IMG/VR virus record: IMGVR_UViG_3300028384_001500
Coordinates: 172,653 to 236,652 of that record
Length of the DNA stretch: 64,000 nt
Reading direction: 5' to 3' (one strand)
Under the pieces are notes generated by a model. It was not told where the DNA came from. It made no database searches and saw only the letters and a program-made list of their open reading frames with translations. The position numbers and the translations under genes are program-made. This document shows, piece by piece, positions 34,124-64,000 of the stretch. Each line of letters opens with the position of its first letter. Position 1 is the stretch's first letter.

Positions 34124-34172
34124 TTTTGCTCCTTTTTATTTTCTATAATACTAAGAAATGCAAAAATTTACA

Positions 34173-39458: not shown

Positions 39459-39459
39459 A

Positions 39460-43246: not shown

Positions 43247-43256
43247 AATCATCCTT

Positions 43257-43285
43257 TTGTTAATTTTAAATTGTCGATGTATAAT
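43257..43285 (+). promoter_or_regulatory. sigma70-like promoter of the stand-alone sigma-region-4 gene
   Basis: TTGTTA-17 nt-TATAAT, then AAGGA SD before the ATG at 43315. Confidence 0.45.
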
Positions 43286-43314
43286 CTTAAATATCACATA
43301 AGGAAACGTATATT

Positions 43315-47946: not shown

Positions 47947-47971
47947 ATATTGTTACTCCTGCTTCTCTATA

Positions 47972-48000
47972 ATAATATTTTATTATATTTTGTATGTAAA
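47972..48000 (-). promoter_or_regulatory. sigma70-like promoter upstream of prkA
   Basis: TTTACA-17 nt-TATTAT, then AGGAG SD. Confidence 0.45.
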
Positions 48001-48001
48001 A

Positions 48002-49327: not shown

Positions 49328-50489
49328 ATTTTCCTCCAAAAAGTTTGGCAAATTGCGGCCAGACATCTTCTTTTTCTCTAATTCTACATACTTTAAAACT
49401 ATCACTAGTTAGAACTTCAAAAACTTTTGCCATTTCTTCTCCCCAAATGCTTTCTTGTTCAGGTTTAATTTGAATATAACCGGCAAGTTGACTAATATCT
49501 GAAAGATAAGACATTTTTTCCAATGCCTTGTCATTATCTTCAGACCAGTTATCACCATCTGAGCAGTGGAACGTATAGATATTCCAAGCTGAAGGACTAT
49601 ATCTTTCATCAATAATATCTTCTGCCATTGCTAAACCGGAAGAAATATAAGTTCCTCCACTGCTGGCTTTCTTAAAGAAATCGTCTTCATTTACTTCTTG
49701 AGCTTCAGTTGTATGTGAAATAAAAACAATATCAACAGTTTGATATTTATATCTAATAAATTGATAAAGCAAAAAGAAGAAAGATCTAGCCAAAAACTTT
49801 TTACGTTTACCCATCGATCCTGAAACATCCATTATCATAAAAATCACAGCATTAGTGATAGGTTTCTTTTTCACCTCAATATGTTTATATTTTAAATCAT
49901 CATAATGAAATGGAAACCTTTCACCACTTTCTGGGTCATATGTTCCGTTTTTTATCGCTTGTTTTTGTCTTCTTATTTTGTTTTTAAGAGTTTCCTTTTT
50001 AGACAGTCTTGCACGTATACCTTTCGGTCTATATCCCTTTCTTTTAATTTTTTCAGCCATTACAGTTGATGACTGTTTTTTATCTAGATCAGGAAGATTT
50101 AAATCGTCAAAAAGATACTTTGCCAATTCATCTAATGATATCTCTACATCATAAAAGTCTTCACCTTTATTATTTCCCGGTTTACCTTCTCCGGATCGAC
50201 CTTGACCTTTTTGTTTGGCTTGTCTTACAACTTGGCCCTTCTGAATATCTTGTCCTTGAGCAGAGCCTACTCCTTTAGAACCACTTCCTTTACCATGAAT
50301 AAATTGGTATTCTTTTATACCTCTTACAGGTATTTTAATCTTTTTCTTTCCATCTTGACCAATAATAGACTCTTCAGCAACTATATCATGAATTCCTTCT
50401 TTAATTGCTTTTTCAATCTTTTCTTTATGGCGTCTTCGATCAGAAGCTGATCGATCAGCAACTGTTTTATGATTTTTAAAAATTGACAT
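49317..50489 (-). CDS. yeaH: YeaH/YhbH (DUF444) VWA-domain protein
   Basis: DRRRH; FPFHYDDLKYK; MIDAS-like MDVSGSM; FISHTTEA; SGGTYISS; WNIYTFHCSDGDNW. Confidence 0.9.
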   Translation of the reverse strand: MSIFKNHKTVADRSASDRRRHKEKIEKAIKEGIHDIVAEESIIGQDGKKKIKIPVRGIKEYQFIHGKGSGSKGVGSAQGQDIQKGQVVRQAKQKGQGRSGEGKPGNNKGEDFYDVEISLDELAKYLFDDLNLPDLDKKQSSTVMAEKIKRKGYRPKGIRARLSKKETLKNKIRRQKQAIKNGTYDPESGERFPFHYDDLKYKHIEVKKKPITNAVIFMIMDVSGSMGKRKKFLARSFFFLLYQFIRYKYQTVDIVFISHTTEAQEVNEDDFFKKASSGGTYISSGLAMAEDIIDERYSPSAWNIYTFHCSDGDNWSEDNDKALEKMSYLSDISQLAGYIQIKPEQESIWGEEMAKVFEVLTSDSFKVCRIREKEDVWPQFAKLFGGKYEL

Positions 50490-53128: not shown

Positions 53129-53215
53129 AATAACTCCTTGATTGTATAGATATATTATATACTGTTATTTTATACGTTGCATTTTTGCATAATACTTAAA
53201 ATTATAAGGGTTTGT

Positions 53216-54004
53216 ATGTATGTAGATTATTTTATTAAACATTGGAGAGAAATTATGTGGGGATCTATTCTATCTTTATTTGGCTTGTTTTATTTATTTA
53301 GTTGTCAAGGTCACCCAAAAATAATTACGCCAAAGTTTAATAATAAATTTCAACATCAACTCTCTAACTTTGTGTTCTTAGTCAAAGAAGTCAAATTAAC
53401 TTTTTGTGATGAGATTGACAAAGAAATGGGAACATGTGACGAAGTCCAGTTTCCTGAAGCTTCTGCAAGTGGAGTTGTAATATCTCAGTCAAGTTCTCAT
53501 ATTTTTATTCTTACTGCAAATCATTTTTGTGTTGACGCTCCTCCCGAAGAAGACATGTCTCTTGTAGGTGAAAGAAAAATTAAAGTATTTATTGGTGACA
53601 CAGAAAGAGAGTCTCAAGTTCTCTATGAGGATGAAGAAAACGATCTATGTCTTTTAGGTTCTATTAAGCTCGAAAAAGAAAACTTTAAGACTGTAAAGTT
53701 CGCAAAAAGGATGCCTAAAATAGGAGAGAAGGTCTATAATTTTGCCGCTCCTAACGGTATAGGCTCACCTAATACAAGACTCGTGTTCGACGGATACTTT
53801 GCGGGTTGTGAACAAAAACTCTGCATGTACAGCATACCTGCAACTTTTGGAAGCAGTGGATCAGCTGTTTATAATGAAAAAGGAGAGTTAGTTTCAATTT
53901 TAGTTGCAGCAGCAATAGATTTTGAAAATGTATCAATGGGCCCGGATATACAAAAAATATCTGAATTAATAATATCTATCGATGATGTAATAGATATTTA
54001 CTAA
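53216..54004 (+). CDS. Trypsin-like (S1) serine protease, membrane-anchored or lipoprotein
   Basis: Triad motifs LTANHFC, NDLCLL, GSSGSAVYN; N-terminal hydrophobic helix ending LFSC. Confidence 0.85.
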   Translation: MYVDYFIKHWREIMWGSILSLFGLFYLFSCQGHPKIITPKFNNKFQHQLSNFVFLVKEVKLTFCDEIDKEMGTCDEVQFPEASASGVVISQSSSHIFILTANHFCVDAPPEEDMSLVGERKIKVFIGDTERESQVLYEDEENDLCLLGSIKLEKENFKTVKFAKRMPKIGEKVYNFAAPNGIGSPNTRLVFDGYFAGCEQKLCMYSIPATFGSSGSAVYNEKGELVSILVAAAIDFENVSMGPDIQKISELIISIDDVIDIY

Positions 54005-54019: not shown

Positions 54020-54427
54020 ATGAGATTAAATGTTGATCATGACCTGCATTATACACCTGAGCAGCTGAAACTTGCTGGAGAATTCATCCTATTCTGCGCA
54101 GATAGTTTACCAATAGAGGGAGACTTTAGTGTTTACCTGACCAATTCTCGGGAACAACACGGTATAGCAACAACTGCACTTTATGAAGTTGGAAATAATT
54201 GTTGCCGTGTCTATTGCAAAAACAGAGCACTGGCTGACGTATTAAGGTCGGTGGCACATGAAATGACGCATATGATGCAAGACCAAACCGGTCTAATAAG
54301 AGGACCAATTAGAGATGCAGGTGGATTTCATGAAGATCAGGCAAACGCAAAAGCAGGTGAGTTAATTAAACTCTTTGCAAAAAGTAAACCTGAAAATAGA
54401 ATGATTTACGAGCGTAGATTAAATTAA
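54020..54427 (+). CDS. Small HEXXH zinc metallopeptidase-like protein
   Basis: LRSVAHEMTHMMQ and downstream HEDQANA; GAGG SD. Confidence 0.7.
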   Translation: MRLNVDHDLHYTPEQLKLAGEFILFCADSLPIEGDFSVYLTNSREQHGIATTALYEVGNNCCRVYCKNRALADVLRSVAHEMTHMMQDQTGLIRGPIRDAGGFHEDQANAKAGELIKLFAKSKPENRMIYERRLN

Positions 54428-55138
54428 CTTTTGATAAAGTTTTGCCAATGCCTTGGTTGACGTAATTCTATTTGATGACATACCTACTTTTTTAAGCTCA
54501 TTTTCAAAATTTTTAAAATACTTAGGCATATCTTTATTAGCAAATTCAAAATGATGAAATTCAGTAATTCCTCTTCCCTTAGGTGTCTGACCTTTTTTTA
54601 GTGAAGCTTTTCCTGAGCTAAAAGCACCGCCCCAATACACTTTATTTTTATACTCAGGCAATTCTAAAAAAGAAATAATAGCATCAACTAATTTTTGATC
54701 TTTTACTAATATCGAATTAAACTTTTTATAGCTTGTATACTTTCCGTATTTTTTTGTGTGCATATAGACGTCTTGAGCAAGACCTGCCCCGTGCTTAGAT
54801 CCAGAAACCCTGTCTTTATTGCCTGCATTGTCAGCTGCAGCACTTAATGCTCTTGTCACGCCTAAGTTGTCAATTTTAAGTCCAATTTCTGGGTAAACAG
54901 AATTAACATAAGCTTCTAATTTTTTTCTAAATCCATCCCAGTAACCTTTTGGCGATATGCCTGTTCTAGGGTCACCTAAATACTTTTTTCCACCAGAGGC
55001 AGTTACTAGTTCTCCTTCATACGCAGATGATTTGTCTGTATTATTTGAATTATTGCTTGTTGTCTTGACATTATAGTCGCCTTTATTTTTGAGTTTTTCT
55101 CTTAATAACAGGCGTATTTTTTCTTCAGATATTATCAT
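54419..55138 (-). CDS. M15-family Zn peptidoglycan peptidase with the shared N-terminal leader
   Basis: SKHGAGLAQD (SxHxxGxAxD), YWGG, HHFEF. Confidence 0.7.
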   Translation of the reverse strand: MIISEEKIRLLLREKLKNKGDYNVKTTSNNSNNTDKSSAYEGELVTASGGKKYLGDPRTGISPKGYWDGFRKKLEAYVNSVYPEIGLKIDNLGVTRALSAAADNAGNKDRVSGSKHGAGLAQDVYMHTKKYGKYTSYKKFNSILVKDQKLVDAIISFLELPEYKNKVYWGGAFSSGKASLKKGQTPKGRGITEFHHFEFANKDMPKYFKNFENELKKVGMSSNRITSTKALAKLYQKLI

Positions 55139-56923
55139 TTAGTTGTACCTACCAGCAGGAAAATTTAAAACAATTTCAAATTTTCTTGTTTTGGACCTAA
55201 TTTTACTTCTAATTCTTGACGGCTCAATCTTTTCGTTGTCTGCGCTTCCGGCTTTTTCTAAATACCTTCTAACAACGTTTCTAAGATTTTCAAATTGCTT
55301 TGCAACTGGAGATCTTCTTTGACCAGGCGCTAATCTTACGTTTTTAACAACACCTTGACGATCTGTCACTATAGTTAAGTTAATTGTCCCACCAGAAATA
55401 TTTCCTTTAACCCTTTGAGAGACAGCATTTACTAAACCATTAGTAGTTCCTTCTTTAAAACCTATACTTTCTAAAGAAGATTTTCCTTGGCCTGCTAATA
55501 TTACTCTAACTGTAGGCTTAAGTCCAAAACCAGTATCAGTTAGCTCACTTCCTGAAATTGTTTCATTACCTGGTATTCTTTTTCGGCTGCGGCCTCCTGA
55601 ACCTCCACCTGATTTAATTTTTTTATTACCTGATCCATAATCAGTGTTTCCATTATAAGCATCAACAACAAACGCTAAACAACCGATTGATCTAGGTACA
55701 TATCCAGGAAAAGCTCCTATCATGTCACCTGAAACTTCCGTCCATGGATAAAAACCACTTTGATAAGTTTTTGAATATTCAAGTGTTTTAAAGACTGAAT
55801 GATATGTAAAAGAGTGGTTAAGCACTTTCCCCCAAAGATCGTCAGTTTGTGGGCCCCATTTACCATCAACTGTGATTTTCATTCCTAAGTTTCTTTCTTC
55901 TGAGTACTTGTTCATAACAAATTGTATTTTTTGAACGGTTGTTCCTTTTAAATCATTAGGATTGATAGGTACAATCTGAGTTGTAGGATCATCAGGTTCT
56001 GGTGGGTTGTTAATTAACTCGTTAACTTGATTTGAAAATTCAATCAATTCTTTTTCACTATAACAAGCTTTTTGTCCATTTCCGTCTTTGAAGCAAATAA
56101 CTGCCTTTCTTTTAAGATCTTGAATAGGCTTTCGGACATAGTCTTCCATATCGTTAGTAAAAGCTAAAGATTCTTCATCACTAAGTTCCTCATTAAAAAC
56201 TTTAACCAAGTCTTTTTTGTATTGCTGCTTAAAAGCTGATGCTGTTAACGACAAATCCATGAGTGAAGGCATTTCTCTAATAACAGTCTCAATTTCACCC
56301 TCATCAGTTCCCATTCCAAAAAAACCACCCTTGGTAGCTCTCCAGAGACGTTTGGCCATTTTAGTATGTAAGTCTAAGACATCATTGTAGTGTGTTAAAG
56401 AAGGAAAGTTTGCCAATTGATCTTGCATGCCGGCTTCTTTCATTTTAGCTTTTGTTTCTGTTTCAATTTTTTTAAGTTCAGCGTTTGTTTTTTCAGCCCA
56501 AGTTCCGTTAAGAATACCCTCAATGTCACTTCCCACGTCACCTTCATCTAATAAAATGTATGCAATTCCAAGTCCTATAGCAACGCCAGCACCAATAACC
56601 CAACCCGGAGGACCCCCCGATATAGCAGCTGCTGCACCGGATGCAGCACCACCGCCAGAAAGATAACCAGCTGCAATAGCAGCAGTAGTTGAATTAGCCA
56701 CACCACCTGCTGTTGCAAGCTGTGCTGCTGCGCCTAAAGTTAAGTTTGTAGCACCTAGCGCACCTAACCCACCTGTTACTCCGTATGTGGTAGCTGCCCC
56801 AGCGATACCTGCTGTTGCAAGATCACCAGCTATTTCTCCCCCACCTTGCTTGTATTTTTCTGCTTTTTCTGCAAGTATGCGCTTTCTAATTATTTTTCTT
56901 AATTCTACCTCTGATAATCTCAT
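55139..56923 (-). CDS. Multidomain protein: leader, Gly/Ala hydrophobic region, annexin-like repeat, peptidoglycan-binding-like domain
   Basis: AKRLWRATKG..GMGTDEGEI...FKQQYKKDL...EELS (annexin); VQKIQ...VDGKWGPQT (PG-binding). Confidence 0.65.
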   Translation of the reverse strand: MRLSEVELRKIIRKRILAEKAEKYKQGGGEIAGDLATAGIAGAATTYGVTGGLGALGATNLTLGAAAQLATAGGVANSTTAAIAAGYLSGGGAASGAAAAISGGPPGWVIGAGVAIGLGIAYILLDEGDVGSDIEGILNGTWAEKTNAELKKIETETKAKMKEAGMQDQLANFPSLTHYNDVLDLHTKMAKRLWRATKGGFFGMGTDEGEIETVIREMPSLMDLSLTASAFKQQYKKDLVKVFNEELSDEESLAFTNDMEDYVRKPIQDLKRKAVICFKDGNGQKACYSEKELIEFSNQVNELINNPPEPDDPTTQIVPINPNDLKGTTVQKIQFVMNKYSEERNLGMKITVDGKWGPQTDDLWGKVLNHSFTYHSVFKTLEYSKTYQSGFYPWTEVSGDMIGAFPGYVPRSIGCLAFVVDAYNGNTDYGSGNKKIKSGGGSGGRSRKRIPGNETISGSELTDTGFGLKPTVRVILAGQGKSSLESIGFKEGTTNGLVNAVSQRVKGNISGGTINLTIVTDRQGVVKNVRLAPGQRRSPVAKQFENLRNVVRRYLEKAGSADNEKIEPSRIRSKIRSKTRKFEIVLNFPAGRYN

Positions 56924-56924
56924 T

Positions 56925-57728
56925 TTATTCTTGTCCTTTTCCTAAAATTTGATTTGCCAAATCTTTTCCGCTACCGGCTCTTCTTGCATCGTCTCTATTT
57001 GATAATCCTTTGTTAGCAGCGTCTAAGCCGCCCTCAACACCAATTGCACCTAAAGTACCTACAGCACCCATCTTAGCAAAATCGCCTAGTTCATCTGCTA
57101 AACCACCTTTATATACGCCGTTGTATAAGAAGTCTTTTAAACTATCATATTCACAAAATATAGCCTCAATCTTAGGTTCAATAATCGGCCCAATCCATTG
57201 GTAAATAAACTGATTAACAACCTCTCTACCCGCTGCATTTATTAATCCGCCAAGCGCCTTATCTAATCTATCTAATAACTCAGGTGATTTAATTTTTTCT
57301 TGACCGGTAACTGTATAATAAATAACTTTGATCAGTTCAGCACCTTGAAGTTCTGTAATTGTTTCAATACCTGCACGAGCAACTAATGCTGGTATTTCTT
57401 TGCATTTCCCTTCCTCAAAATATTTACCCATACCTAAAATATTAAATTCTTCAATAAAATTCATTAAGAATCTAAAAACTACGCTTTGTTTATCAACACC
57501 CATAAGATCAGCAAGGTATTCAATCACTTGAGACTTAAATGCACTAACTAAACCACCGCCAAAAATATCCATAATATTTTCCTCAATAACACGAGGCTGA
57601 TATCCGGATAATTTGTAGTTGATTTGATCGATTCTTTCCATAATCAAATGATTGGTTTTTAATTCATTTAACATTACTTTGCTTTCAATAGACTCTTGCA
57701 CAAGCCTTCTTATTTGATATTTGTTCAT
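56925..57728 (-). CDS. Hypothetical protein with the shared leader and a C-terminal glycine-zipper-like segment
   Basis: Start placed at MNKYQIRRLVQE with GGAG SD; GAVGTLGAIGVEGG. Confidence 0.55.
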   Translation of the reverse strand: MNKYQIRRLVQESIESKVMLNELKTNHLIMERIDQINYKLSGYQPRVIEENIMDIFGGGLVSAFKSQVIEYLADLMGVDKQSVVFRFLMNFIEEFNILGMGKYFEEGKCKEIPALVARAGIETITELQGAELIKVIYYTVTGQEKIKSPELLDRLDKALGGLINAAGREVVNQFIYQWIGPIIEPKIEAIFCEYDSLKDFLYNGVYKGGLADELGDFAKMGAVGTLGAIGVEGGLDAANKGLSNRDDARRAGSGKDLANQILGKGQE

Positions 57729-57755
57729 TATTATGTTCTCCATGCATGATCTAAC

Positions 57756-57764
57756 TATAATTAT
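57756..57764 (-). promoter_or_regulatory. ATANTTATA putative late-promoter motif
   Basis: ATAATTATA about 28 nt upstream of the ATG at 57728. Confidence 0.4.
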
Positions 57765-57786
57765 TAACGTCTGATTAAATGTTATA

Positions 57787-58110
57787 TTATATTTCAATCA
57801 CATAAGAATATTTAACACCTGGATTGAATAATTGCTTCTGATACGGTCTGGCTTTGAAATCTTTAAGTATGTTGAAGTCTTTATCTAAAAATATAATATG
57901 AAGAGGAATTCCAGTATTTTTCATTGTAAAAGAATGATTTACGGGTGTATTATAAACAAACAACATACCGTGATTTTTTGGAAGTTCTTTTATTTTTGAC
58001 AGGCCTATTCTTTTTTTATTGGGAGTGTCAGCTATGGCTAGTGTGTAAGTCCTTCCCATAATTTTTGTTTTAATTCTCTTATAACCTTTAAAAAGTTGGT
58101 AAAAATGCAA
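57787..58110 (-). CDS. DUF192-family protein
   Basis: IADTPNKKRIGLS...GMLFVY...FTMKNTGIPLHIIFLD...YVIEI; start uncertain (TTG 58110 or a downstream ATG). Confidence 0.8.
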   Translation of the reverse strand: MHFYQLFKGYKRIKTKIMGRTYTLAIADTPNKKRIGLSKIKELPKNHGMLFVYNTPVNHSFTMKNTGIPLHIIFLDKDFNILKDFKARPYQKQLFNPGVKYSYVIEI

Positions 58111-58132
58111 CGTGCACCGCCTAATGATATAG

Positions 58133-58141
58133 TATAAATAT
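58133..58141. promoter_or_regulatory. AT-rich promoter motif in a divergent intergenic region
   Basis: Reads ATATTTATA on the minus strand (family motif) and TATAAATA (T4 late consensus) on the plus strand; orientation ambiguous. Confidence 0.4.
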
Positions 58142-58157
58142 ACACCAGGAGAAGAGA

Positions 58158-58616
58158 ATGTTTATGTTTGCAATATTTTTAACAATTCAAAATGCAAATG
58201 CTGACAAAGAGACGCTAGTAAAAGCATATGAATGGGAAAAAAAACCAGCAATACAAATTTGCGGTGATTCAAATGTAACAATTAAAGAAGTAAATAATGC
58301 CCTTTCTTATTGGCAAGATGAGCTAAATAATAAAAACTTGGTAAAAAGTGTATCTTACAAAGAAACATGCTCATTTAATAGATCAAATGTTATTTTATTT
58401 ACTAACGAATACAATAGAAGATTTGAAAAAGAACTGGCAAATACAAACTTAGACTGGTATTATTATGAAGGTGAAAGCCAAAAATATCTGAACACAGCAA
58501 AAGTAGCAATCCCTAATAATATATCATATAAGCGACAATTAACAATTACACATGAGTTAGGTCACGCCTTGGGTTATCACCACTCGAATCACGAAGTAAT
58601 GAAAAGCCATTTTTAA
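58158..58616 (+). CDS. Metzincin/matrixin-like zinc metalloprotease, probably secreted
   Basis: HELGHALGYHH (HExxHxxGxxH) with a Met-turn (EVM); signal-peptide-like N-terminus; AGGAG SD. Confidence 0.8.
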   Translation: MFMFAIFLTIQNANADKETLVKAYEWEKKPAIQICGDSNVTIKEVNNALSYWQDELNNKNLVKSVSYKETCSFNRSNVILFTNEYNRRFEKELANTNLDWYYYEGESQKYLNTAKVAIPNNISYKRQLTITHELGHALGYHHSNHEVMKSHF

Positions 58617-58620
58617 ACAA

Positions 58621-58644
58621 ATAAAAACTCCGGCCTGACCGGAG
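58621..58644 (-). terminator. Intrinsic terminator (minus strand)
   Basis: Stem ctccgg/ccggag with a 5-nt loop, followed by TTTTTAT on the minus strand. Confidence 0.65.
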
Positions 58645-58710
58645 CGAGCTGCCCAACTCTATGAGCGAAGAGCAGTACCCCGAGGGGGTCCTACTTTCTC
58701 TCCACCCTGC

Positions 58711-59169
58711 TTACTCAAGAAAATCATCTGGATATCGATTTGGGTTCCGATTTCTAGAATACCGATCAAGATTATAATCATCCGAACCCAAATAAGAGTC
58801 AGTCTTACTCCGAGCTAGATCATATGCTTTATCATCTAATGCACGTAGATCATGCAAAGAGTCAGGGTGAAGTGCACGATACCCGCCCGGGAAAAAAGGA
58901 TCAACCGGCTCATAGAGTGCAGCAGCCTCATTACCTAACCTTTCCATGTCACCAACTTCCATATACGCTATGTAGTTATCGACATAATCATCTGGACCGC
59001 CCAATGCGTCGACAAGAGAGTGGGCTTGTTCTACTGACCCCCTATCGATCAACGAGTTAATCTTTGCTACGTGACTATTAGGAATATGCGCAGGTAATGT
59101 CGGCTTAATCCGATGTTCAGATAAAACTTCCATGATTAGGTCTCGTAAACGTCTTCTATTTAATTTCAT
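58711..59169 (-). CDS. Single-unit paralog of the tandem-repeat protein, with the shared leader
   Basis: MKLNRRRLRDLIMEVLSEHRIKP...LVDALGGP...VGDMERLGN; start placed by GGAG SD. Confidence 0.75.
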   Translation of the reverse strand: MKLNRRRLRDLIMEVLSEHRIKPTLPAHIPNSHVAKINSLIDRGSVEQAHSLVDALGGPDDYVDNYIAYMEVGDMERLGNEAAALYEPVDPFFPGGYRALHPDSLHDLRALDDKAYDLARSKTDSYLGSDDYNLDRYSRNRNPNRYPDDFLE

Positions 59170-59191
59170 ATTATTTTCTCCAATTGCCTGC

Positions 59192-59578
59192 TTAAATAAA
59201 GTCATCATCATCATCGTCGAAATCATCGACAATAGTCGACACCGGATAAGTGTTCATATTACCAGGATAATATTCTCTAAATCGGCCTCGTCCTCCGCCT
59301 ATCTCATCATCGAAGTATTGGATCTGTGCGCCGATTGTATCTGTGTCACCGCTCTCTAAGCTGTGCACGTGAGTAAAACCCATACCTTTGAGTGCTACAA
59401 GAGCACCGGCAACTTCATCCATTTCGTCGACGACGATTTCTCCACCTGCTAGTTCAGGATGGCGCAGGGTGAATCCGGCACCTAGTGATAACTCTACAAC
59501 CTTCATAGTATTGTCTTGTAGCATTGTTAGCTCATTAAGGATCATGCGTCGCAACGCTCTTCTGTTTAAGCTTTTCAT
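59192..59578 (-). CDS. Acidic hypothetical protein with the shared leader
   Basis: MKSLNRRALRRMILNEL; poly-Asp C-terminus; AGGAGG SD; ATGA overlap. Confidence 0.7.
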   Translation of the reverse strand: MKSLNRRALRRMILNELTMLQDNTMKVVELSLGAGFTLRHPELAGGEIVVDEMDEVAGALVALKGMGFTHVHSLESGDTDTIGAQIQYFDDEIGGGRGRFREYYPGNMNTYPVSTIVDDFDDDDDDFI

Positions 59579-61680
59579 AAAGTAGGCCCTCCTGCGGCTT
59601 CTATCATTTCTTCCAGTTCATAAGCACGAGACTGCAATTCTTCTTTATCATCGTAGTAATCGGGATACTCCATTTCATACCCATAAGCAGCCTCGATGGG
59701 ATCAACACCGAATCGCTCTTGAGTCATGAGGTAGTCCTGTCTTTCCATTTCCATTTCTTCGAGTTGTGCCTCGATACGCTGCAATTCTTGCATCATTGCG
59801 TCGATCGACATGGGAGGCTGTCCGCCTATACCCATGCTTGACATCTCTTGCAAGATCATGCGTCGTAATCCGGCTCTGTTGGAGTTATGTTCATTTAGCG
59901 GTTTAACACTTCCCATGCCTCGCATGTATCTGTCACGCATGTATGGGTAACTTGCATGTGTACGCGCACCCGGTTTTGTAGTGCCATCGAACCCAGGGGC
60001 TAGTCCGCGTGAGACTTTGTCTGCCCCTAACCTGTAAGCCTGGTTGTCTAAGTCTTCAAGTTGTCTGTAGTCATCAGATTCGTACCATTCTGGATCTGAG
60101 TAATCAGCATTGGCAAGTATATCAGCTCGAGCATTACCTAGCTTTTCTAAGTCACCCACTTCTTCGTAGGCTCGATAATTTTCGACCCAATTTGGATCGC
60201 CACCAAAAGCGTCGATGAATGTCTGTGCCTGATCAAAATCGCCGGTATTAATTAAGTCATGGATCTTATCGATGTGCGACTGCGGCAAACCTAGTAGATC
60301 AAGCGGTGGAGGCGCAATACGATGTTCATTTAGTGGGTTGCCGTCGTCATCGAAATAGGTAGGCGACTTGTCTCCTCTATGGTCAACAAAAGTATGAGGC
60401 AAAGTGTTATTTCTAATGTTGAAGTATCTGTCACGCATATAGTCACGATCCCAAGTGGTGTCAGCTGGAAGTTCCCCTCTTTCTATTTTGCTATTGACAC
60501 TGTCATAAGCATGCTTATCGATATCGTAGACAGGCTGCATATCACTCATTGTTGACCAACCTCTTTCTGTTTTAGGTACTCTGGACATAACGTCAGCTGC
60601 CCGGTTACCCAGCTTTTCTAAGTCTCCGACTTCATCATACATTTGATAATCTCTTGCATAGTTAGGAGGACCACCAAAAGCGTCGATGAGTGACTGTGCC
60701 ATTTCTAATTCTCCATCACTGATGAGATCATGGATCTTGTCGACGTGATCCTGTGGTACACCCGGTAGATTAAGTGAGGGCGCAATGCGATGCTCAGATA
60801 GCGGCCTGTCTCTGTTACCTACATATCGTCGCATATCAGACTGAAAGCTACCACTACCACCAAAAATAGAATGAGCATCTCCGTCTATCATTTGCCCTCT
60901 TTTGTGAGCTATACCAACAGCTTCCCTATCTATGTTTTTGAGTGCATTTGTCAATTCTAAACTGTCGCGATCATATGTCGATCTAGCATCGTAGGCTTGA
61001 TTGCCCAATTTCTCCATGTCACCTACATTACTATAAAGAATATAGTCGTCAACGTAGTCAACAGGCCCGCCAAGAGCATCGATGAGCGACCGTGCCATCT
61101 CTATTTCACCTCCGTCGATGAGGTCTTGTATTTTGTGCAAATGGTGAAGAGGAATATTTGTGGGAACAGGAGGCGCAGTGAGATGCTCAAATAAGAATTC
61201 ATCCGGATCCGATTCATCATCGATATATCTATCTCTGTTACCTCTATAGCGATCCAGAGCTATGTCTTGGGCATCTGGGTTATAATACTCTTGACCGTCC
61301 TCAATTTCTACGGCTTTGTCCTGTGATAGCGAGTAAGCCTCCCTGTCTACATCACGTACTTTTTTCCAGTCATCAGTTTTCATAAAGTCACGCGCAGCGA
61401 ATTCTTCTGGAGAGTCAGGGAGGATGTCTGCAGCTCGATTACCTAGCTTCTCCATATCACCTACATTTTGGTACTCTAGATAATCCTGCGCATAAGTAGG
61501 AGAGCCACCCAAAGCATCAACCAGCGATTGGGCTTGGGATAAGTCACCGTGATCGATGATGCCATGTATAGTATCCAAGTGCTGAGGTGGTATTGCACCT
61601 GCGTCTGGCATTGTCCGGTGTTCTCTTAAAGCCATTCGCTCCAAGATCATTCGTCGTATTTTCTGTCGTGAGATTTTCAT
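59575..61680 (-). CDS. Tandem-repeat polyprotein-like protein (four units of about 131-156 aa plus an acidic tail)
   Basis: Four copies of LxEH..P...I..LID.G...AQ.L.DA.GG...VGD(M/L)EKLGN; start placed at MKISRQ by GGAG SD. Confidence 0.8.
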   Translation of the reverse strand: MKISRQKIRRMILERMALREHRTMPDAGAIPPQHLDTIHGIIDHGDLSQAQSLVDALGGSPTYAQDYLEYQNVGDMEKLGNRAADILPDSPEEFAARDFMKTDDWKKVRDVDREAYSLSQDKAVEIEDGQEYYNPDAQDIALDRYRGNRDRYIDDESDPDEFLFEHLTAPPVPTNIPLHHLHKIQDLIDGGEIEMARSLIDALGGPVDYVDDYILYSNVGDMEKLGNQAYDARSTYDRDSLELTNALKNIDREAVGIAHKRGQMIDGDAHSIFGGSGSFQSDMRRYVGNRDRPLSEHRIAPSLNLPGVPQDHVDKIHDLISDGELEMAQSLIDAFGGPPNYARDYQMYDEVGDLEKLGNRAADVMSRVPKTERGWSTMSDMQPVYDIDKHAYDSVNSKIERGELPADTTWDRDYMRDRYFNIRNNTLPHTFVDHRGDKSPTYFDDDGNPLNEHRIAPPPLDLLGLPQSHIDKIHDLINTGDFDQAQTFIDAFGGDPNWVENYRAYEEVGDLEKLGNARADILANADYSDPEWYESDDYRQLEDLDNQAYRLGADKVSRGLAPGFDGTTKPGARTHASYPYMRDRYMRGMGSVKPLNEHNSNRAGLRRMILQEMSSMGIGGQPPMSIDAMMQELQRIEAQLEEMEMERQDYLMTQERFGVDPIEAAYGYEMEYPDYYDDKEELQSRAYELEEMIEAAGGPTL

Positions 61681-61703
61681 TTCTGCTCCGTGATGCATCG
61701 TAT

Positions 61704-61712
61704 TATAACTAT
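61704..61712 (-). promoter_or_regulatory. ATANTTATA putative late-promoter motif
   Basis: ATAGTTATA about 24 nt upstream of the ATG at 61680. Confidence 0.45.
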
Positions 61713-61749
61713 TTACACTGTATTTATTTTTCTTATTAAATATTAAAAA

Positions 61750-62385
61750 CTAGTCACGAGTTATAAAAAGTTTATTGCCCATTGCCATAATAGTCGTGTT
61801 ACTCTTAGAATAGCGTTTACTCAGGGGAGACATTGCCCAGTAAATACCGTCGTAGCCTATCATGTTCTTAGGAATACGCTGAGACATGTTATCCCAGTCG
61901 TCAGGAGTCAAGGTGTTCTTTGTGTCATCACACTGAAAAACATCGATGTCTCCGGCGCCTGACTGGCTATACTGGGATCGATTTCTAAGATAGAAGTCCC
62001 AGACGTCTTGAGCATCTTTGCTGACCATGCGACGATCAGCGACCAGCCCTGACCCCTTCATCGAGGCGACTTCCATCGCGATATCATAGATAAGCGGGCC
62101 GTAACCGTTTGCCGCCATGGCCTGATACACCTCCCAAGCGCCGCCGCACGTGTCGTCTTTTAAGGGCACTATCGCAATATATCCGTATATGCCCTCAGGA
62201 GACGGACTGTGGTCTTCAGCGTAGAATCTACCCATAGACCCGTCGGCGTTGATTCCGCAATATGTCACACAAACGTCGCCCTTAGGGAAGAAATTGACAT
62301 TTACACCGATTGTCGGAGGTAACTCTCCGTGTGCGATCATGGCTTCAGAGATTATTTGATTTAGCTGCCTTCTTGTAATTCTCAT
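61750..62385 (-). CDS. GNAT-like protein with the shared leader
   Basis: WEV...NGYGPLIYDIAME...VSKDAQDVWDFY resembles GNAT motif A/B spacing. Confidence 0.5.
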   Translation of the reverse strand: MRITRRQLNQIISEAMIAHGELPPTIGVNVNFFPKGDVCVTYCGINADGSMGRFYAEDHSPSPEGIYGYIAIVPLKDDTCGGAWEVYQAMAANGYGPLIYDIAMEVASMKGSGLVADRRMVSKDAQDVWDFYLRNRSQYSQSGAGDIDVFQCDDTKNTLTPDDWDNMSQRIPKNMIGYDGIYWAMSPLSKRYSKSNTTIMAMGNKLFITRD

Positions 62386-62391
62386 AGTGAT

Positions 62392-62400
62392 TATAACTAT
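62392..62400 (-). promoter_or_regulatory. ATANTTATA putative late-promoter motif
   Basis: ATAGTTATA only 6 nt upstream of the ATG at 62385; no SD visible. Confidence 0.45.
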
Positions 62401-62402
62401 CT

Positions 62403-62430
62403 AAAAGTTCTCCAAAATTCAGGAGAAATT
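62403..62430. repeat. Degenerate third copy of the intergenic palindromic repeat
   Basis: aaaagttctccaaaattcaggagaaatt versus aaaagttttccaaattttccggagaaatt. Confidence 0.6.
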
Positions 62431-62710
62431 AACGTCGTCTTACCCATATGTTATCATCACAGCGACTAGTTCGCAAATGCCAACAACCGCAGTCATCCGA
62501 CCAGTACGCTGTATGCTGACGATCGTACTTCAAGAACTGATATCTTGAGTAAAGATCAGCAACTTCCTCGTAAGGAAAACGAATTTTCTTGCACCCGCTG
62601 TAGAAACAGTTACACTTACTGAACTCACCGCGGAAATGATATTTTCCGTTTTTAATAATTATTGACCAAGTTCTCCGCCCATCCCTGACAGACTTACATA
62701 CACGTTCCAT
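62429..62710 (-). CDS. Small Cys/Trp-rich hypothetical protein
   Basis: GAGGAG SD before MERVCK; several Cys residues. Confidence 0.55.
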   Translation of the reverse strand: MERVCKSVRDGRRTWSIIIKNGKYHFRGEFSKCNCFYSGCKKIRFPYEEVADLYSRYQFLKYDRQHTAYWSDDCGCWHLRTSRCDDNIWVRRR

Positions 62711-62920
62711 TGAACACACTCCTCTATGATAATCGTTTTTTTACGATATCACTTACGATGTGTCCCGAAACTTCACGTCCACCCATTAGCCTCTCTTCCA
62801 GAAGGACCTGCGCTTTCCCGTTCGGATCTAAGCTTTACCTCTATGTTGCTGTCTAGACACCGTCGATCTTTTAGGTTGGCCATTCTGGACTATGGCAATC
62901 TCTAGTACCCATACATTTAT

Positions 62921-62949
62921 ATTATATGCTGTTTCACACACGGTTACAA
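62921..62949 (-). promoter_or_regulatory. Near-consensus sigma70 promoter
   Basis: TTGTAA-17 nt-TATAAT directly downstream of a terminator and the palindromic repeat. Confidence 0.55.
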
Positions 62950-62959
62950 AAGTTTTGCA

Positions 62960-62984
62960 AAATTTTCCGGAGAAATTTTTGTGA
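62960..62984. repeat. 25-bp quasi-palindromic direct repeat, copy 1
   Basis: aaattttccggagaaatttttgtga, identical to 63642-63666. Confidence 0.9.
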
Positions 62985-62985
62985 G

Positions 62986-63013
62986 AAAAAGAAACGCCGG
63001 TGATGAGCCGGCG
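62986..63013 (-). terminator. Intrinsic terminator (minus strand)
   Basis: Stem cgccgg/ccggcg with a 7-nt loop, followed by TTTCTTTTT on the minus strand, just after the stop at 63034. Confidence 0.7.
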
Positions 63014-63033
63014 CGAGTTTTTACTTTTATCTA

Positions 63034-63591
63034 TTAACCCCAACCATCAATTCTCATATGCGGGTAATTTTCAACAATATACATCATTGCCATACGGCCC
63101 CAGTCATTTTCATCTTGAATATTTAAAAGCAAATTAATTGGGCCGTCTTTCCAACTATTAAATGGGCCAGGTCCTCGATTCTGGACCACGTAATCATAAT
63201 TACAATAATTAAGCAACGTCTGCTGCCTATCAATATCGATCGGATTTGTAGGTCCCATAGTGTCAGGAAAATCATCAGGTTTCATACCCGCAATACCGTA
63301 AGTTAACTCTAGTTCTGCCAAGATTCTCTCAAACTCCTGAATAGCTCGATCAATCGCTCTTTTAACACTAGCTTCAGAAGTTCCACCGTATATCGTCTTC
63401 AAAACATTATCACTAGCTTCGTCAAGATATATTTTTAAAATGGCTTCGCCTTTTCCGCCGGCTCGATCTTCTCCCATGCCAAAAAATCCACCTGGCGGCG
63501 ATATCACATTGTCTTTATCATCATCGTTAAAAATAGTGTCTCTAAACTCTTTTAAAACCATCTGTCGTAACTGTGTTCTAGTCAATTTCAT
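63034..63591 (-). CDS. Hypothetical protein with the shared leader
   Basis: MKLTRTQLRQMVLKEF; AAGGAG SD; TATAAT at 63607-63612. Confidence 0.7.
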   Translation of the reverse strand: MKLTRTQLRQMVLKEFRDTIFNDDDKDNVISPPGGFFGMGEDRAGGKGEAILKIYLDEASDNVLKTIYGGTSEASVKRAIDRAIQEFERILAELELTYGIAGMKPDDFPDTMGPTNPIDIDRQQTLLNYCNYDYVVQNRGPGPFNSWKDGPINLLLNIQDENDWGRMAMMYIVENYPHMRIDGWG

Positions 63592-63641
63592 AGCTTCTCC
63601 TTTATGATTATAATATACAATTTATATAGGAAAAGTTTTCC

Positions 63642-63666
63642 AAATTTTCCGGAGAAATTTTTGTGA
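63642..63666. repeat. 25-bp quasi-palindromic direct repeat, copy 2
   Basis: Identical to 62960-62984; flanking aaaagtttt is also shared. Confidence 0.9.
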
Positions 63667-63790
63667 CGAAATGTGCAATGTCCACAGTCTGGTGCGCAGA
63701 AAACAGGGTTGTAAATCGTATTGCTGCTGAGTGTACGTATGTTTAGGTAAGTTGATCAAAAAGTGGTCGTGTAGAAAATTTTGACTTAGG

Positions 63791-63860
63791 CCCGGCAGGG
63801 AGCGCTAGACGGGCCGGTGGGCATGGGGCTCTGCGCGGGGGGCGGGCGCCCCCAGCCCTC
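63791..63860. other. Non-coding GC-rich island with G-tracts and a hairpin
   Basis: 58 of 70 nt are G/C in an otherwise AT-rich genome; six G3+ tracts; gggggc/gccccc stem. Confidence 0.7.
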
Positions 63861-64000
63861 TAGAAGGGGCCTAAATAGGGGCTGCAGGAAGCTCCAGAAT
63901 GACGTGCAAGACACTTTTACTCGTGCGCCAGACAGATACATAAGTTCTCATCGGAAATGCAACCGGGCGCAAGATGATGTATAATATAGATGTCCACCCC

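What the first reader, a model, noticed from the sequence alone, without database searches (positions are those of the whole stretch)
55139..56923. Phage protein joining a Gly/Ala membrane segment, an annexin-like repeat and a PG-binding-like domain
Seen: about 100 aa of Gly/Ala-rich hydrophobic sequence ending in a TM-like helix (WVIGAGVAIGLGIAYILL). Then, at about 56170-56365, AKRLWRATKGGFFGMGTDEGEIETVI...AFKQQYKKDLVKVFNEELS, which follows the annexin consensus (A..L..AMKG.GTDE..LI.IL...Y...Y...L...L..ELS). Then VQKIQ...VDGKWGPQT at about 55840-55945. Established: annexin repeats bind anionic phospholipid via Ca2+; they are mainly eukaryotic with sporadic bacterial homologs. Inference: an ejected protein that spans the envelope, engaging membrane and wall to form or anchor a DNA-delivery conduit. 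I know of no characterised phage annexin.
Basis: partly seen in the sequence, partly recalled or inferred. Interest (0 to 1): 0.85.

Follow-up and report, generated by a model that had tools for sequence, protein, structure and literature searches.

The report
Phage envelope protein with annexin repeat
A large uncultured phage encodes a membrane-anchored protein that contains a true, if divergent, annexin repeat (a calcium-dependent lipid-binding module known mainly from eukaryotes), which extends annexins to viruses; its role in infection is still only inferred.

Summary
Window 55139-56923 (-) is an intact 594-aa ORF.

Annexin homology is established by profiles, not by the single sequence:
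- Pfam gives 15.1 bits, below the cut-off of 25.
- A profile of 77 phage relatives, with no recognised annexins among them, hits annexin VI and A8 in the PDB at E 6e-13 to 2e-12. All 60 listed hits are annexins.
- The family profile retrieves Pfam-positive annexins from 1.84 billion proteins.
- The GxGT(D/E) calcium loop and its distal Glu are kept in nearly all relatives.

The PG-binding-like and a TonB/TolA-C-terminal-like domain rest only on fold and language-model leads. HMMER and hhalign tests were negative.

The gene sits in a syntenic block next to an M15/VanY cell-wall peptidase. At least eight neighbouring, otherwise unrelated genes share a 12-19-aa N-terminal leader ending in [LIV]-x-E, which resembles a T4 capsid-targeting sequence.

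Best reading: an envelope-bridging protein (membrane, wall, outer membrane), possibly delivered from the virion. The route of delivery is unproven. This is a new variant of a known kind and moderately to highly interesting.

The parts
55139..56923 (-). Intact ORF of 594 aa (the finding)
   Evidence: There are 10 close clusters at 46-66% identity over the full length and 129 representatives at E<=1e-3 in 1.84e9 proteins.
56867..56923 (-). N-terminal leader, residues 1-19 (MRLSEVELRKIIRKRILAE). It is basic and amphipathic and ends in L-x-E. The same kind of leader opens at least seven neighbouring genes.
   Evidence: M1, L3, E5, R9, I12, R13, R15 and E19 are invariant in the close family.
56549..56821 (-). 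Uncharged Gly/Ala-rich stretch, residues 35-125. Its last 19 residues (107-125, nt 56549-56605) form the only TM-grade helix. An acidic flank (DEGDVGSDIEG) follows.
   Evidence: hydropathy, composition, flanks. Length varies from about 43 to 92 aa among relatives.
56105..56371 (-). Single annexin repeat, residues 185-273. Predicted helices are A 185-198, B 208-217, C 221-235, D 239-247 and E 258-273.
   Evidence: Profile vs PDB gives only annexins, best 6.4e-13 and 1e-5. The reverse HMM scores 69.4 bits against <=4.6 for shuffles. The AF2 model has pLDDT mostly >90 here.
56300..56332 (-). AB loop, residues 198-208 (KGGFFGMGTDE). This is the GxGT(D/E) type II Ca2+-loop signature, with extra residues including two Phe relative to the canonical KGxGT.
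   Evidence: Alignments. Family conservation: G203 47/55, G205 53/55, T206 55/55, D207 44/58, E208 52/58.
56186..56188 (-). Glu246, the distal acidic residue that aligns with the capping Glu of the annexin Ca2+ site (the ...ELS motif)
   Evidence: E or D in 59 of 60 family members. It aligns to the E of K-S-E-L-S/T in annexins A8 and A7.
56060..56098 (-). Beta-hairpin, residues 276-288, flanked by Cys277 and Cys287
   Evidence: Both Cys are invariant in the close family. Strands 276-279 and 285-288 appear in both models. The Cys pair is present in the 11 closest relatives only.
55634..55972 (-). Helical module, residues 318-430. It carries V-x-x-IQ-x-x-MN...DG-x-WG-x-x-TD...PGY-x(4)-GCLAF-x-D-x-Y. 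It is PG_binding-like at fold level only, and is the most widespread module of the superfamily.
   Evidence: Found in 92 of the fetched proteins. Pfam, PDB and hhalign are negative.
55529..55633 (-). Gly/Arg/Lys-rich linker, residues 431-465, predicted disordered
   Evidence: pLDDT <50 in both models. Length is variable in the alignment.
55142..55528 (-). C-terminal alpha/beta domain, residues 466-594. It is TonB_C / TolA-domain-III-like at fold level only.
   Evidence: About 20 of the top 50 Foldseek PDB hits are TonB, TolA, HasB or FusB C-terminal domains, but at E 0.4-6. ESM Atlas gives TM 0.50-0.61. HMMER and hhalign are negative.
54419..55138 (-). Downstream gene, abutting the target's stop: a 239-aa leader-bearing M15/VanY-type peptidase. 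Its likely substrate is cell-wall peptide.
   Evidence: Weak Peptidase_M15_4 hit here. Orthologues carry VanY and Peptidase_M15_4 hits. The orthologues are 675-779 aa, one with DUF2272, in distant relatives.
56925..57728 (-). Upstream gene, stop 1 nt from the target's ATG: a 267-aa leader-bearing protein of unknown function with a Gly/Ala-rich C-terminus
   Evidence: Conserved at this position in L001-L006.
58711..63591 (-). Five further leader-bearing genes: 58711-59169, 59192-59578, 59575-61680, 61750-62385 and 63034-63591. All are soluble and mostly acidic.

Best explanation
**What it is (shown)**
A modular protein of an uncultured jumbo myophage, built in this order:
- an N-terminal 19-aa leader;
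- an uncharged Gly/Ala-rich segment ending in one transmembrane-grade helix;
- one genuine but divergent annexin repeat that keeps the GxGT(D/E)...Glu calcium-site signature and has a Phe-Phe-bearing AB loop;
- a helical module;
- a C-terminal alpha/beta domain.

**How it most likely works (inferred)**
It bridges the host cell envelope.
- The hydrophobic segment sits in the inner membrane.
- The annexin repeat, next to it in sequence, clamps onto anionic phospholipid head groups through bound Ca2+, and its hydrophobic loop tip dips into the bilayer.
- The PG_binding-like module holds on to murein.
- The TonB/TolA-like end contacts an outer-membrane component.
- It acts together with the co-transcribed M15/VanY peptidase, which cuts the wall.

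**Delivery (more speculative)**
The leader ends in [LIV]-x-E and is shared with at least seven otherwise unrelated neighbouring proteins. It may act like a T4 capsid-targeting sequence. If so, the protein and the peptidase would be packed in the head, trimmed by the prohead protease and ejected at infection. They would open the wall and anchor or line the DNA path across the periplasm and inner membrane.
For: **Annexin homology**
- The single sequence vs PDB returns only annexins (A8 at E 0.0045).
- The 10-sequence profile scores 1e-5.
- The 77-sequence profile, with no recognised annexins in it, scores 6.4e-13 and 2.3e-12. All 60 listed hits are annexins.
- The family profile pulls annexin-only matches from 1.84e9 proteins at E 8e-11 to 1e-3. 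Of those, 18 of 25 are Pfam Annexin, best 1.3e-155.
- An HMM built from those annexin repeats scores the target at 69.4 bits, against <=4.6 for 570 shuffles.
- The Ca-site residues are conserved in 47-59 of 55-60 relatives.
- Five helices of annexin-like lengths are predicted at pLDDT >90.

**Membrane segment**
-.

**Wall and outer-membrane modules**
- Three independent kinds of lead agree on PG_binding and TonB_C/TolA-III folds (Foldseek; ESM features and structures).

**Cell-wall context**
- The order DUF192 - ~270-aa protein - target - M15/VanY peptidase - HExxH protein - Trypsin_2 is kept even in distant, differently built orthologues.
- The three core genes abut, with 0-1 nt gaps.

**Leader**
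- Present on 8 of 9 minus-strand genes of at least 100 aa between 54.4 and 63.6 kb, and on 0 of 33 such genes elsewhere in the window. A strict pattern recovers 7 of the 8; its background rate is 3 in 17,302 residues.
- The same holds in related contigs.
- The other leader-bearing proteins are soluble, so the leader is not a membrane signal.
- T4 internal proteins are likewise diverse, with only a conserved 10-20-aa N-terminal CTS removed by gp21 (PMC3012670, PMC5694885, PMC9026906).
- The neighbouring lysin is 675-779 aa with two hydrolase-type domains in relatives, which is more like virion-associated lysins than like Gram-negative endolysins (the comparison is from my own knowledge).
Against: - There is no experimental or proteomic evidence that the protein is in the virion.
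- No head genes or prohead protease lie in the window or in the 10 kb beyond it.
- The T4 late-promoter motif is not enriched.
- The single sequence fails Pfam's Annexin gathering score (15.1 vs 25 bits).
- Foldseek gives no significant structural match for any domain (best E 0.43).
- PG_binding_1 and TonB_C are not supported by HMMER or hhalign.
- A protein with a TM-grade helix may be hard to keep soluble for packaging.
- The basic N-terminus, the acidic flank after the helix and the Cys-flanked hairpin downstream fit an ordinary N-in/C-out inner-membrane protein made in the cell just as well.
- One annexin repeat alone may bind lipid weakly. Classical annexins use four.
Confidence: 0.5

Rival explanations
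1. The domain anatomy is the same, but the protein is made in the infected cell. It is inserted by the host as an N-in/C-out inner-membrane protein built like TolA or TonB (anchor, long periplasmic part, globular end). It would then work from inside in one of three ways: as a spanin-like or holin-associated lysis factor that links and destabilises the two membranes once the adjacent peptidase has cut the wall; as a superinfection-exclusion factor; or as a Tol/Ton-mimicking factor.
For: - The first 28 residues carry net charge of about +5, and the 15 residues after the helix carry -5.
- The downstream part has a Cys-flanked hairpin, and relatives carry 2-6 Cys, which suits an oxidising compartment.
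- The TonB/TolA-like and PG_binding-like leads place these domains in the periplasm.
- The gene sits next to a possible endolysin and to proteases with signal peptides that are clearly exported from inside the cell.
- Annexins are known to aggregate membranes with Ca2+ (own knowledge; reviewed in PMC10882027, which was listed but not read).
Against: - The same leader opens soluble, TM-less proteins, including the peptidase, so it is not a topology signal.
- In orthologues at the same locus the annexin repeat lies before the hydrophobic segment (P0028-30, P0042, P0049, P0061, P0063). In a single-span protein that would put it in the cytoplasm.
- The TM helix comes after about 75 aa of odd uncharged low-complexity sequence rather than near the N-terminus as in TolA and TonB.
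- The helix has no TonB-type S-x3-H motif (sequence).
- No outer-membrane lipoprotein partner gene overlaps or follows it, as spanin pairs have.
- At 594 aa it is several times the size of known holins and spanins (own knowledge).
Confidence: 0.3
2. The annexin repeat serves to protect or repair the host membrane, in the way eukaryotic annexins patch damaged membranes. This would keep the infected cell intact and energised while the phage's wall-degrading and proteolytic enzymes act, or after tail puncture.
For: - The annexin homology and retained Ca site.
- Membrane anchoring.
- A neighbourhood rich in envelope-directed hydrolases.
- The repair role of annexins is established for eukaryotes (own knowledge; PMC10882027 abstract).
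Against: - Purely analogical.
- It does not explain the PG_binding-like and TonB/TolA-like modules or the leader.
- The annexin repeat is dispensable in orthologues such as P0034 (816 aa, no annexin) at the same locus.
Confidence: 0.08
3. The annexin resemblance is a chance or convergent match of a short helical, Gly-rich motif, and the protein has no relation to annexins.
For: - The single sequence is below Pfam's threshold.
- Only 4 of 10 close relatives reach even E<=1.
- Foldseek matches to annexins are not significant.
Against: - Profile E-values reach 6e-13, with annexins as the only listed hits.
- Bona fide annexins are retrieved in the reverse direction.
- The reverse HMM scores 69 bits against <=4.6 for shuffles.
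- The match covers the whole repeat, helices A-E, not just the loop.
- The functional residues are conserved across at least 55 divergent relatives.
Confidence: 0.02

Closest known systems
Bacterial annexins, including single-repeat and TM-anchored forms (Kodavali et al. 2014, PMC3894181)
   Same: - Contains the annexin repeat with the GxGTD/E type II Ca2+ motif and a hydrophobic residue at x.
- Has one or a few repeats instead of the eukaryotic four.
- Combines the repeat with transmembrane regions and unrelated domains.
- Has a sporadic distribution.
- The nearest non-phage matches are small proteins with an N-terminal TM helix plus one or two repeats (P0086, P0098, P0102, P0105).
   Different: - Encoded by a phage. 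The 2014 survey found none in viruses.
- The AB loop is lengthened and carries Phe-Phe.
- The partners are a PG_binding-like and a TonB/TolA-like module and a shared N-terminal leader. None of these is described for bacterial annexins.
T4 internal proteins (IPI-III, Alt) and their capsid-targeting sequence
   Same: - A set of otherwise unrelated, fast-evolving proteins share only a short N-terminal leader ending in a [LI]-x-E type site.
- The phage has a T4-type baseplate (PMC3012670, PMC9026906).
   Different: - The leader here is 12-19 aa, basic and Arg-rich, and has no demonstrable sequence relation to the T4 CTS.
- Packaging and cleavage are untested.
- T4 internal proteins are small soluble proteins that go to the cytoplasm. 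This one has a membrane segment and envelope-type domains.
Ejection and envelope-spanning proteins of tailed phages (T7 gp14/15/16, P22 gp7/20/16, T5 Pb2 with fusogenic and muralytic parts). Recalled from memory.
   Same: They join membrane-inserting segments to wall-degrading activity, supplied here by the adjacent M15 peptidase, to carry DNA across a Gram-negative envelope.
   Different: - No sequence or fold relation was found.
- None of them uses an annexin, PG_binding or TonB_C-like domain.
- This phage is a contractile-tailed myovirus.
TolA / TonB
   Same: - The overall plan: a membrane helix, a long mostly helical or disordered periplasm-length spacer, and a small alpha/beta C-terminal domain.
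- The C-terminal domain gives TolA III and TonB C-terminal domains as its commonest fold matches.
   Different: - No sequence or profile similarity.
- No S-x3-H motif in the helix.
- No ExbBD/TolQR partner genes nearby.
- The helix is not at the N-terminus.

Membership tests
Annexin (Pfam PF00191) | Single sequence scores above Pfam's gathering threshold (25 bits) | tested here: not met
   15.1 bits, E 0.025, residues 203-248 on model positions 12-56 of 66. Only 4 of 10 close relatives reach E<=1.
Annexin (Pfam PF00191) | Statistically significant profile-level homology to recognised annexins, in both directions | tested here: met
   - Family profile vs PDB: annexin VI 6.4e-13, A8 2.3e-12. All 60 listed hits are annexins.
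- The family profile retrieves annexin-region-only hits, of which 18 of 25 are Pfam Annexin.
- The reverse HMM scores 69.4 bits against <=4.6 for shuffles.
Annexin (Pfam PF00191) | GxGT(D/E) type II Ca2+ loop between helices A and B, plus an acidic residue about 38-40 residues downstream | tested here: met
   G203-M-G-T-D-E208 and E246. Conserved in 47-55 of 55 and 59 of 60 relatives. The motif definition comes from PMC3894181. The loop is longer than canonical (KGGFFGMGT vs KGxGT).
Annexin (Pfam PF00191) | Five-helix (A-E) repeat fold | tested here: inconclusive
   AF2 predicts five helices of fitting lengths at high confidence. However, Foldseek matches to annexin XII, V and Gh1 have E 0.5-1 and poor rmsd. 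I could not superpose the isolated repeat.
Annexin (Pfam PF00191) | Core of four (or eight) repeats | tested here: not met
   There is one repeat envelope per protein in the phage family. Some bacterial annexins are like this too (PMC3894181).
Annexin (Pfam PF00191) | Ca2+-dependent binding to anionic phospholipid | not testable with these tools
   Needs liposome binding assays.
PG_binding_1 (PF01471) / PGBD-like | HMM or profile match to the family | tested here: not met
   - No hit at E<=1 for the target.
- 0 of 35 whole relatives at 1e-3.
- 1 of 55 C-terminal halves at E 0.17.
- No PDB hit with the 55-sequence profile at E<=10.
- hhalign vs E. coli AmiD finds nothing in its PG-binding domain.
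PG_binding_1 (PF01471) / PGBD-like | Three-helix PG-binding fold | tested here: inconclusive
   - Foldseek local match to the SleC PG-binding domain: probability 0.97, 42 columns, rmsd 1.1, but E 1.6. It is weaker with the better model.
- ESM Atlas for residues 318-430: 91 of the 100 nearest named clusters carry PG_binding_1 or PG_binding_3, with scores 0.85-0.90 and TM 0.46-0.55. By that tool's own calibration these are leads only.
TonB_C (PF03544) / TolA domain III | HMM or profile match to the family | tested here: not met
   hhalign vs E. coli TonB gives E 0.075 and vs TolA gives E 0.19, at probability <1%. The best local piece does fall on the equivalent beta-hairpin of both.
TonB_C (PF03544) / TolA domain III | Small alpha/beta C-terminal fold | tested here: inconclusive
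   - About 20 of the top 50 Foldseek PDB hits are TonB, TolA, HasB or FusB C-terminal domains, with TM by target 0.35-0.51 and E 0.4-6.
- ESM Atlas for residues 462-594: mostly TonB_C clusters, score 0.88, TM 0.50-0.61.
TonB | N-terminal TM helix with the S-x3-H motif, and ExbB/ExbD partners | tested here: not met
   The helix at 107-125 has no His or Ser-x3-His. No ExbBD/TolQR-like genes were found among the neighbours scanned.
T4-type capsid-targeting sequence proteins | A short N-terminal leader shared by otherwise unrelated proteins and ending in a [LI]-x-E processing site | tested here: met
   Eight genes at 54419-63591 show the pattern (seven by the strict pattern, one by eye), and none of the 33 other minus-strand genes of at least 100 aa does. 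The same holds in L001, L002, L005 and L006. This is a pattern match only.
T4-type capsid-targeting sequence proteins | Packaged in the head and trimmed by a gp21-type prohead protease | not testable with these tools
   The head module is outside the window and outside the 10 kb I could reach. Needs virion mass spectrometry.
Spanin (two-component or unimolecular) | A small type II inner-membrane protein with a periplasmic coiled coil plus an overlapping or adjacent outer-membrane lipoprotein gene, or an N-terminal lipobox with a C-terminal TM | tested here: not met
   The protein is 594 aa with no lipobox at its N-terminus. No embedded or following lipoprotein ORF lies on the same strand. The only lipobox-like signal nearby belongs to the opposite-strand Trypsin_2 gene.

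The most novel reading that the evidence does not exclude
The shared N-terminal leader is a capsid-targeting signal of a new jumbo-phage lineage. This protein would then be the first annexin-domain ejection protein. On that reading, a virus uses Ca2+-bridged docking to bacterial anionic lipids, next to a fusion-peptide-like Gly/Ala segment, to build or anchor its DNA path across the envelope. A close alternative is that it acts as an annexin-based single-chain membrane-fusing lysis factor. Either reading would also mark annexin repeats as a widespread prokaryotic-virus module, present in at least 55 clusters at 50% identity. That bears on the unresolved origin of annexins.
Probability: 0.3. 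Interest if true: 0.8.

Novelty: new variant of a known kind. Interest (0 to 1): 0.62.

Why it matters
- **Annexins in viruses.** Annexins are textbook eukaryotic Ca2+/lipid-binding proteins. Their prokaryotic relatives are few, and a dedicated survey found none in viruses. Here a whole family of phage proteins carries a well-conserved annexin repeat with its calcium site intact, fused to envelope-type modules. At least 55 representative clusters at 50% identity, all from metagenomes, have it. This widens the known range of the fold, adds data to the question of where annexins came from, and gives a bacterial-membrane setting in which a single repeat can be tested.
- **Phage biology.** The gene marks a conserved cell-envelope module (lysin, proteases, DUF192) in an uncultured jumbo-phage lineage. 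Together with the shared N-terminal leader, it yields a testable list of candidate packaged or ejected proteins.

Tried and rejected
- **Isolate relatives.** tblastn of the protein, megablast of 20 kb and tblastn of the 28-aa leader against 50,697 phage records found nothing. No isolate is close enough to lend annotation or proteomics.
- **PHROGs.** No family for the target or its two partners.
- **Foldseek.**
  - The second was good (mean pLDDT 86.7).
  - Neither gave a significant PDB match. BFVD gave nothing useful.
  - A multi-domain query with one 70-aa helical repeat seems too weak for this test, and I could not crop the model.
- **PG_binding_1 and TonB_C.** I tried Pfam on whole relatives and on 55 C-terminal halves, a PDB profile search, and hhalign against E. 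coli AmiD, TonB and TolA. All were negative, so I do not file these domains as members.
- **Cys-pair topology test.** The hairpin Cys pair occurs only when the annexin follows the TM helix (11 against 0). However, all 11 are one close clade, so it counts as a single event and I rejected it as evidence.
- **T4 late-promoter motif TATAAATA.** 4 matches against 9.3 expected. Sigma-70-like sites are at chance level. No timing information came from this.
- **The 'GGFFGMGED' 9-mer in the 63034-63591 product.** There is no similarity beyond the 9-mer, so it is not a second annexin.
- **Reaching the head genes.** I walked 10 kb beyond the window's left edge and found tail-fibre-like and unrelated genes only. 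The right edge is the contig end.
Full report
**1. The observation**

Window 55139-56923 on the minus strand is a single intact ATG-started ORF of 594 aa.

- Residues 35-125 contain no charged residue, and G+A is 53%. Only the last 19 residues (107-125) reach transmembrane-grade hydropathy (2.05); the rest scores 0.6-1.0. An acidic run (DEGDVGSDIEG) follows the stretch.
- The annexin-like stretch is residues 190-248 (nt 56180-56356).
- The V-Q-K-I-Q ... V-D-G-K-W-G-P-Q-T stretch is residues 330-360 (nt 55844-55936).

The replicon is a phage.
- The window holds T4-type baseplate wedge genes. They are about 31% identical to those of Flavobacterium and Microcystis myophages and of a 484-kb uncultured phage.
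- It also holds PhoH, PrkA/DUF444/SpoVR and UvdE.
- It is the last 64 kb of a 236,652-bp metagenomic contig.
- No isolate phage has a detectable relative of the protein.

**2. Is the annexin resemblance real?**

By the single sequence it is only suggestive. Pfam Annexin gives 15.1 bits at E 0.025, below the 25-bit cut-off. phmmer against the PDB returns three chains, all annexins, best E 0.0045. The signal grows steadily as family information is added.

- A profile of the 10 close relatives gives annexin A8 at 1e-5. The top eight PDB hits are all annexins.
- An exhaustive profile search of 1.84 billion representatives found 129 relatives. About 25 of them match only the annexin-like segment. 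Of those, 18 are Pfam Annexin proteins, best E 1.3e-155.
- I built a profile from 77 members of the phage family and deliberately left out those recognised annexins. It hits annexin VI at 6.4e-13 and annexin A8 at 2.3e-12. All 60 listed PDB hits are annexins or annexin fusions.
- In the reverse direction, an HMM built from the retrieved annexin repeats scores the target at 69.4 bits over residues 187-252. It scores 55 phage-family members at 15 bits or more. 570 shuffled controls reach at most 4.6 bits. One caveat applies: those repeats were selected by similarity to the family, so this score is generous.

The functional signature is conserved across the divergent family.

| Residue | Conservation in relatives |
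|---|---|
| A196 | 49/49 |
| G203 | 47/55 |
| G205 | 53/55 |
| T206 | 55/55 |
| D207 | 44/58 |
| E208 | 52/58 |
| E246 (distal acidic) | E or D in 59/60 |

This is the GxGTD/E type II Ca2+ motif described for annexins (PMC3894181). The x residue is Met, and hydrophobic residues are usual at this position. The loop is longer than canonical (K-G-G-F-F-G-M-G-T against K-G-x-G-T) and places two Phe at its tip.

With the deeper alignment, AlphaFold2 gives a confident model (mean pLDDT 86.7). It has five helices of annexin-like lengths: 185-198, 208-217, 221-235, 239-247 and 258-273.

Foldseek does list annexin XII, V and Gh1 near the top, but at E 0.5-1. The fold is therefore predicted and consistent, not structurally proven.

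My conclusion is that this is one genuine, divergent annexin repeat. It fails Pfam's single-sequence threshold and lacks the four-repeat core, as several bacterial annexins do.

**3. The rest of the protein**

*Residues 318-430.* This is the most widespread module of the superfamily, found in 92 of the fetched proteins. Its consensus is V-x-x-I-Q-x-x-M-N ... D-G-x-W-G-x-x-T-D ... P-G-Y-T-x(4)-G-x-L-A-F-x-x-D-x-Y.
- The first half reads like PG_binding_1.
- No sequence method supports membership.
- Support is at the level of leads only: a local Foldseek match to the SleC PG-binding domain (probability 0.97 but E 1.6), and ESM Atlas neighbours that are 91% PG_binding_1/3 clusters with TM about 0.5.

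*Residues 466-594.* These form a confident alpha/beta domain.
- Its commonest Foldseek matches are TolA domain III and the TonB, HasB and FusB C-terminal domains (E 0.4-6, TM by target up to 0.51).
- Its ESM Atlas neighbours are mostly TonB_C clusters.
- HMMER and hhalign are again negative, although the best local hhalign piece falls on the equivalent beta-hairpin of both E. coli TonB and TolA.

I treat both modules as fold-level resemblances of moderate likelihood.

*Residues 276-305.* Between the annexin repeat and the 318-430 module lies a beta-hairpin flanked by two Cys that are invariant in the close family.

**4. Context**

The gene order is DUF192 - ~270-aa protein - target - M15/VanY peptidase - small HExxH protein (opposite strand) - Trypsin_2 protease (opposite strand) - UvdE.
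- This order is kept in close relatives.
- It is also kept in distant orthologues of different build. In L005 the annexin repeat precedes the hydrophobic segment. In L006 an 816-aa orthologue has no annexin repeat at all.
- In those relatives the peptidase gene grows to 675-779 aa, one of them with an added DUF2272 domain.
- The upstream gene, the target and the peptidase abut with 0-1 nt between them. A terminator-like hairpin lies upstream of the DUF192 gene.

**5. An unexpected feature that bears on function**

Eight of the nine minus-strand genes of at least 100 aa between 54419 and 63591, the target included, begin with the same kind of 12-19-aa leader. It reads M-[KR]-[LI]-[STN]-x-x-x-[LI]-R-x-[LIM]-[ILV]-x-E.
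- A strict pattern finds it in 7 of these genes, and one more is seen by eye. It finds it in none of the 33 other minus-strand genes of at least 100 aa in the window. The pattern's background rate is 3 in 17,302 residues.
- Related contigs show the same leader on many genes.
- Apart from the leader, these proteins are unrelated. All but the target lack hydrophobic segments, and most are acidic. The leader is therefore not a membrane signal.
- The pattern mirrors the T4 internal proteins. Those are diverse proteins with only a conserved 10-20-aa capsid-targeting sequence that gp21 removes at [LI]-x-E-type sites, and they are a suggested route by which T4-like phages load varied cargo (PMC3012670, PMC5694885, PMC9026906).
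- This is an analogy. I could not reach the head module to test it.

**6. Mechanism**

*Shown:* the domain anatomy and the annexin homology.

*Inferred:*
- The hydrophobic segment embeds in the inner membrane.
- The adjacent annexin repeat binds anionic lipid head groups through Ca2+.
- The C-terminal modules engage murein and an outer-membrane component.
- Together with the co-transcribed M15 peptidase, the protein forms an envelope-spanning tether.

Two delivery routes fit.
- **(a) Packaging through the leader, then ejection.** The leader, the hypervariable build at a fixed locus and the large lysin in relatives all favour it. It also copes with the permuted domain order, because a protein inserting from the periplasmic side is not bound by a single-span topology.
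- **(b) Synthesis in the cell as an N-in/C-out protein.** The charge distribution around the helix, the Cys pair and the exported neighbours favour this. The protein would then act in lysis, exclusion or Tol/Ton mimicry.

I put about 0.5 on the envelope-bridge reading with virion delivery as the more likely route. I put 0.3 on the cell-made variant, under 0.1 on a membrane-repair role and 0.02 on chance.

**7. Novelty**

- A dedicated survey reported no annexins in viruses (PMC3894181).
- The paper library holds no 'phage annexin', 'viral annexin' or 'virus-encoded annexin' phrase.
- Automatic annotation has touched the family: the ESM Atlas lists a viral cluster in which 27% of members carry the Pfam Annexin label.
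- The annexin domain in phages is therefore not invisible to databases, but it is uncharacterised.
- The architecture (leader, Gly/Ala membrane segment, annexin, PG_binding-like, TonB/TolA-like) matches nothing I could find.
- I rate it a new variant of a known kind.

Noticed in passing
window 54419-63591 (-): starts at 55138, 56923, 57728, 59169, 59578, 61680, 62385, 63591: Eight consecutive, otherwise unrelated genes open with the same 12-19-aa basic amphipathic leader ending in [LIV]-x-E. None of the 33 other minus-strand genes of at least 100 aa in the window has it. Related contigs (L001, L002, L005, L006) show the same leader on many genes. It may be a capsid-targeting or processing signal.
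   Followed up: partly
relatives P0028-P0030, P0042, P0049, P0061, P0063 (e.g. L005:6104-8065) and P0034 (L006:7130-9580): Orthologues at the same syntenic position have the annexin repeat before, rather than after, the Gly/Ala hydrophobic segment, or lack it altogether. The 318-430-type module is kept throughout, and the C-terminal domain in part of them. So there is domain shuffling at a fixed locus.
   Followed up: partly
window 53177-54004 (+), 54020-54427 (+), 57787-58110 (-), 58158-58616 (+): A conserved set of envelope-directed genes surrounds the target: a Trypsin_2 protease with a lipobox-like signal (LFSC), a small HExxH protein, DUF192, and a signal-peptide Zn-metallopeptidase (HELGHALG, weak M10/M57 hits). 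It is unusual for a phage to carry so many exported proteases.
   Followed up: partly
window 56001-64000: GC content climbs from about 0.32 to 0.44 towards the right end of the window, which is also the end of the 236,652-bp contig. The high-GC part coincides with the leader-bearing, acidic-protein genes.
   Followed up: no
window 46006-50489 (-): A complete PrkA - SpoVR - DUF444 (YeaG/YcgB/YeaH-type) stress-response triad is encoded by the phage and conserved in relatives (L002, L003, L005).
   Followed up: no
window 41882-43297 (-): A PIN domain is fused to PhoH in one 471-aa protein.
   Followed up: no
window 59575-61680 (-) and 58711-59169 (-): The 701-aa leader-bearing protein is very acidic (D+E 137 against K+R 74). 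It shares a motif of the type S-L-[IV]-D-A-L-G-G...D-Y-V-D-[DN]-Y-I with the product of 58711-59169 and with genes in L001. It hits only phrog_16324, of unknown function.
   Followed up: no
window 63034-63591 (-), residues 34-42: The 9-mer GGFFGMGED almost repeats the target's annexin AB loop (GGFFGMGTD). Nothing else in the protein resembles an annexin repeat.
   Followed up: partly
window 30785-41385 (-): A run of glycosyltransferase genes (GT1/GT4 and GT2 families) lies between the baseplate module and PhoH.
   Followed up: no
L007:18691-19959: Just beyond the window's left edge the contig encodes a 422-aa protein with PAP2 and weak Fic hits, followed by an AAA_5 (MoxR-like) ATPase and a DUF2201 protein.
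   Followed up: no
L001:9700-15174: The far part of the 59.6-kb contig carrying P0008 has differently organised genes, including a eukaryote-type protein kinase. The contig may be chimeric.
   Followed up: no
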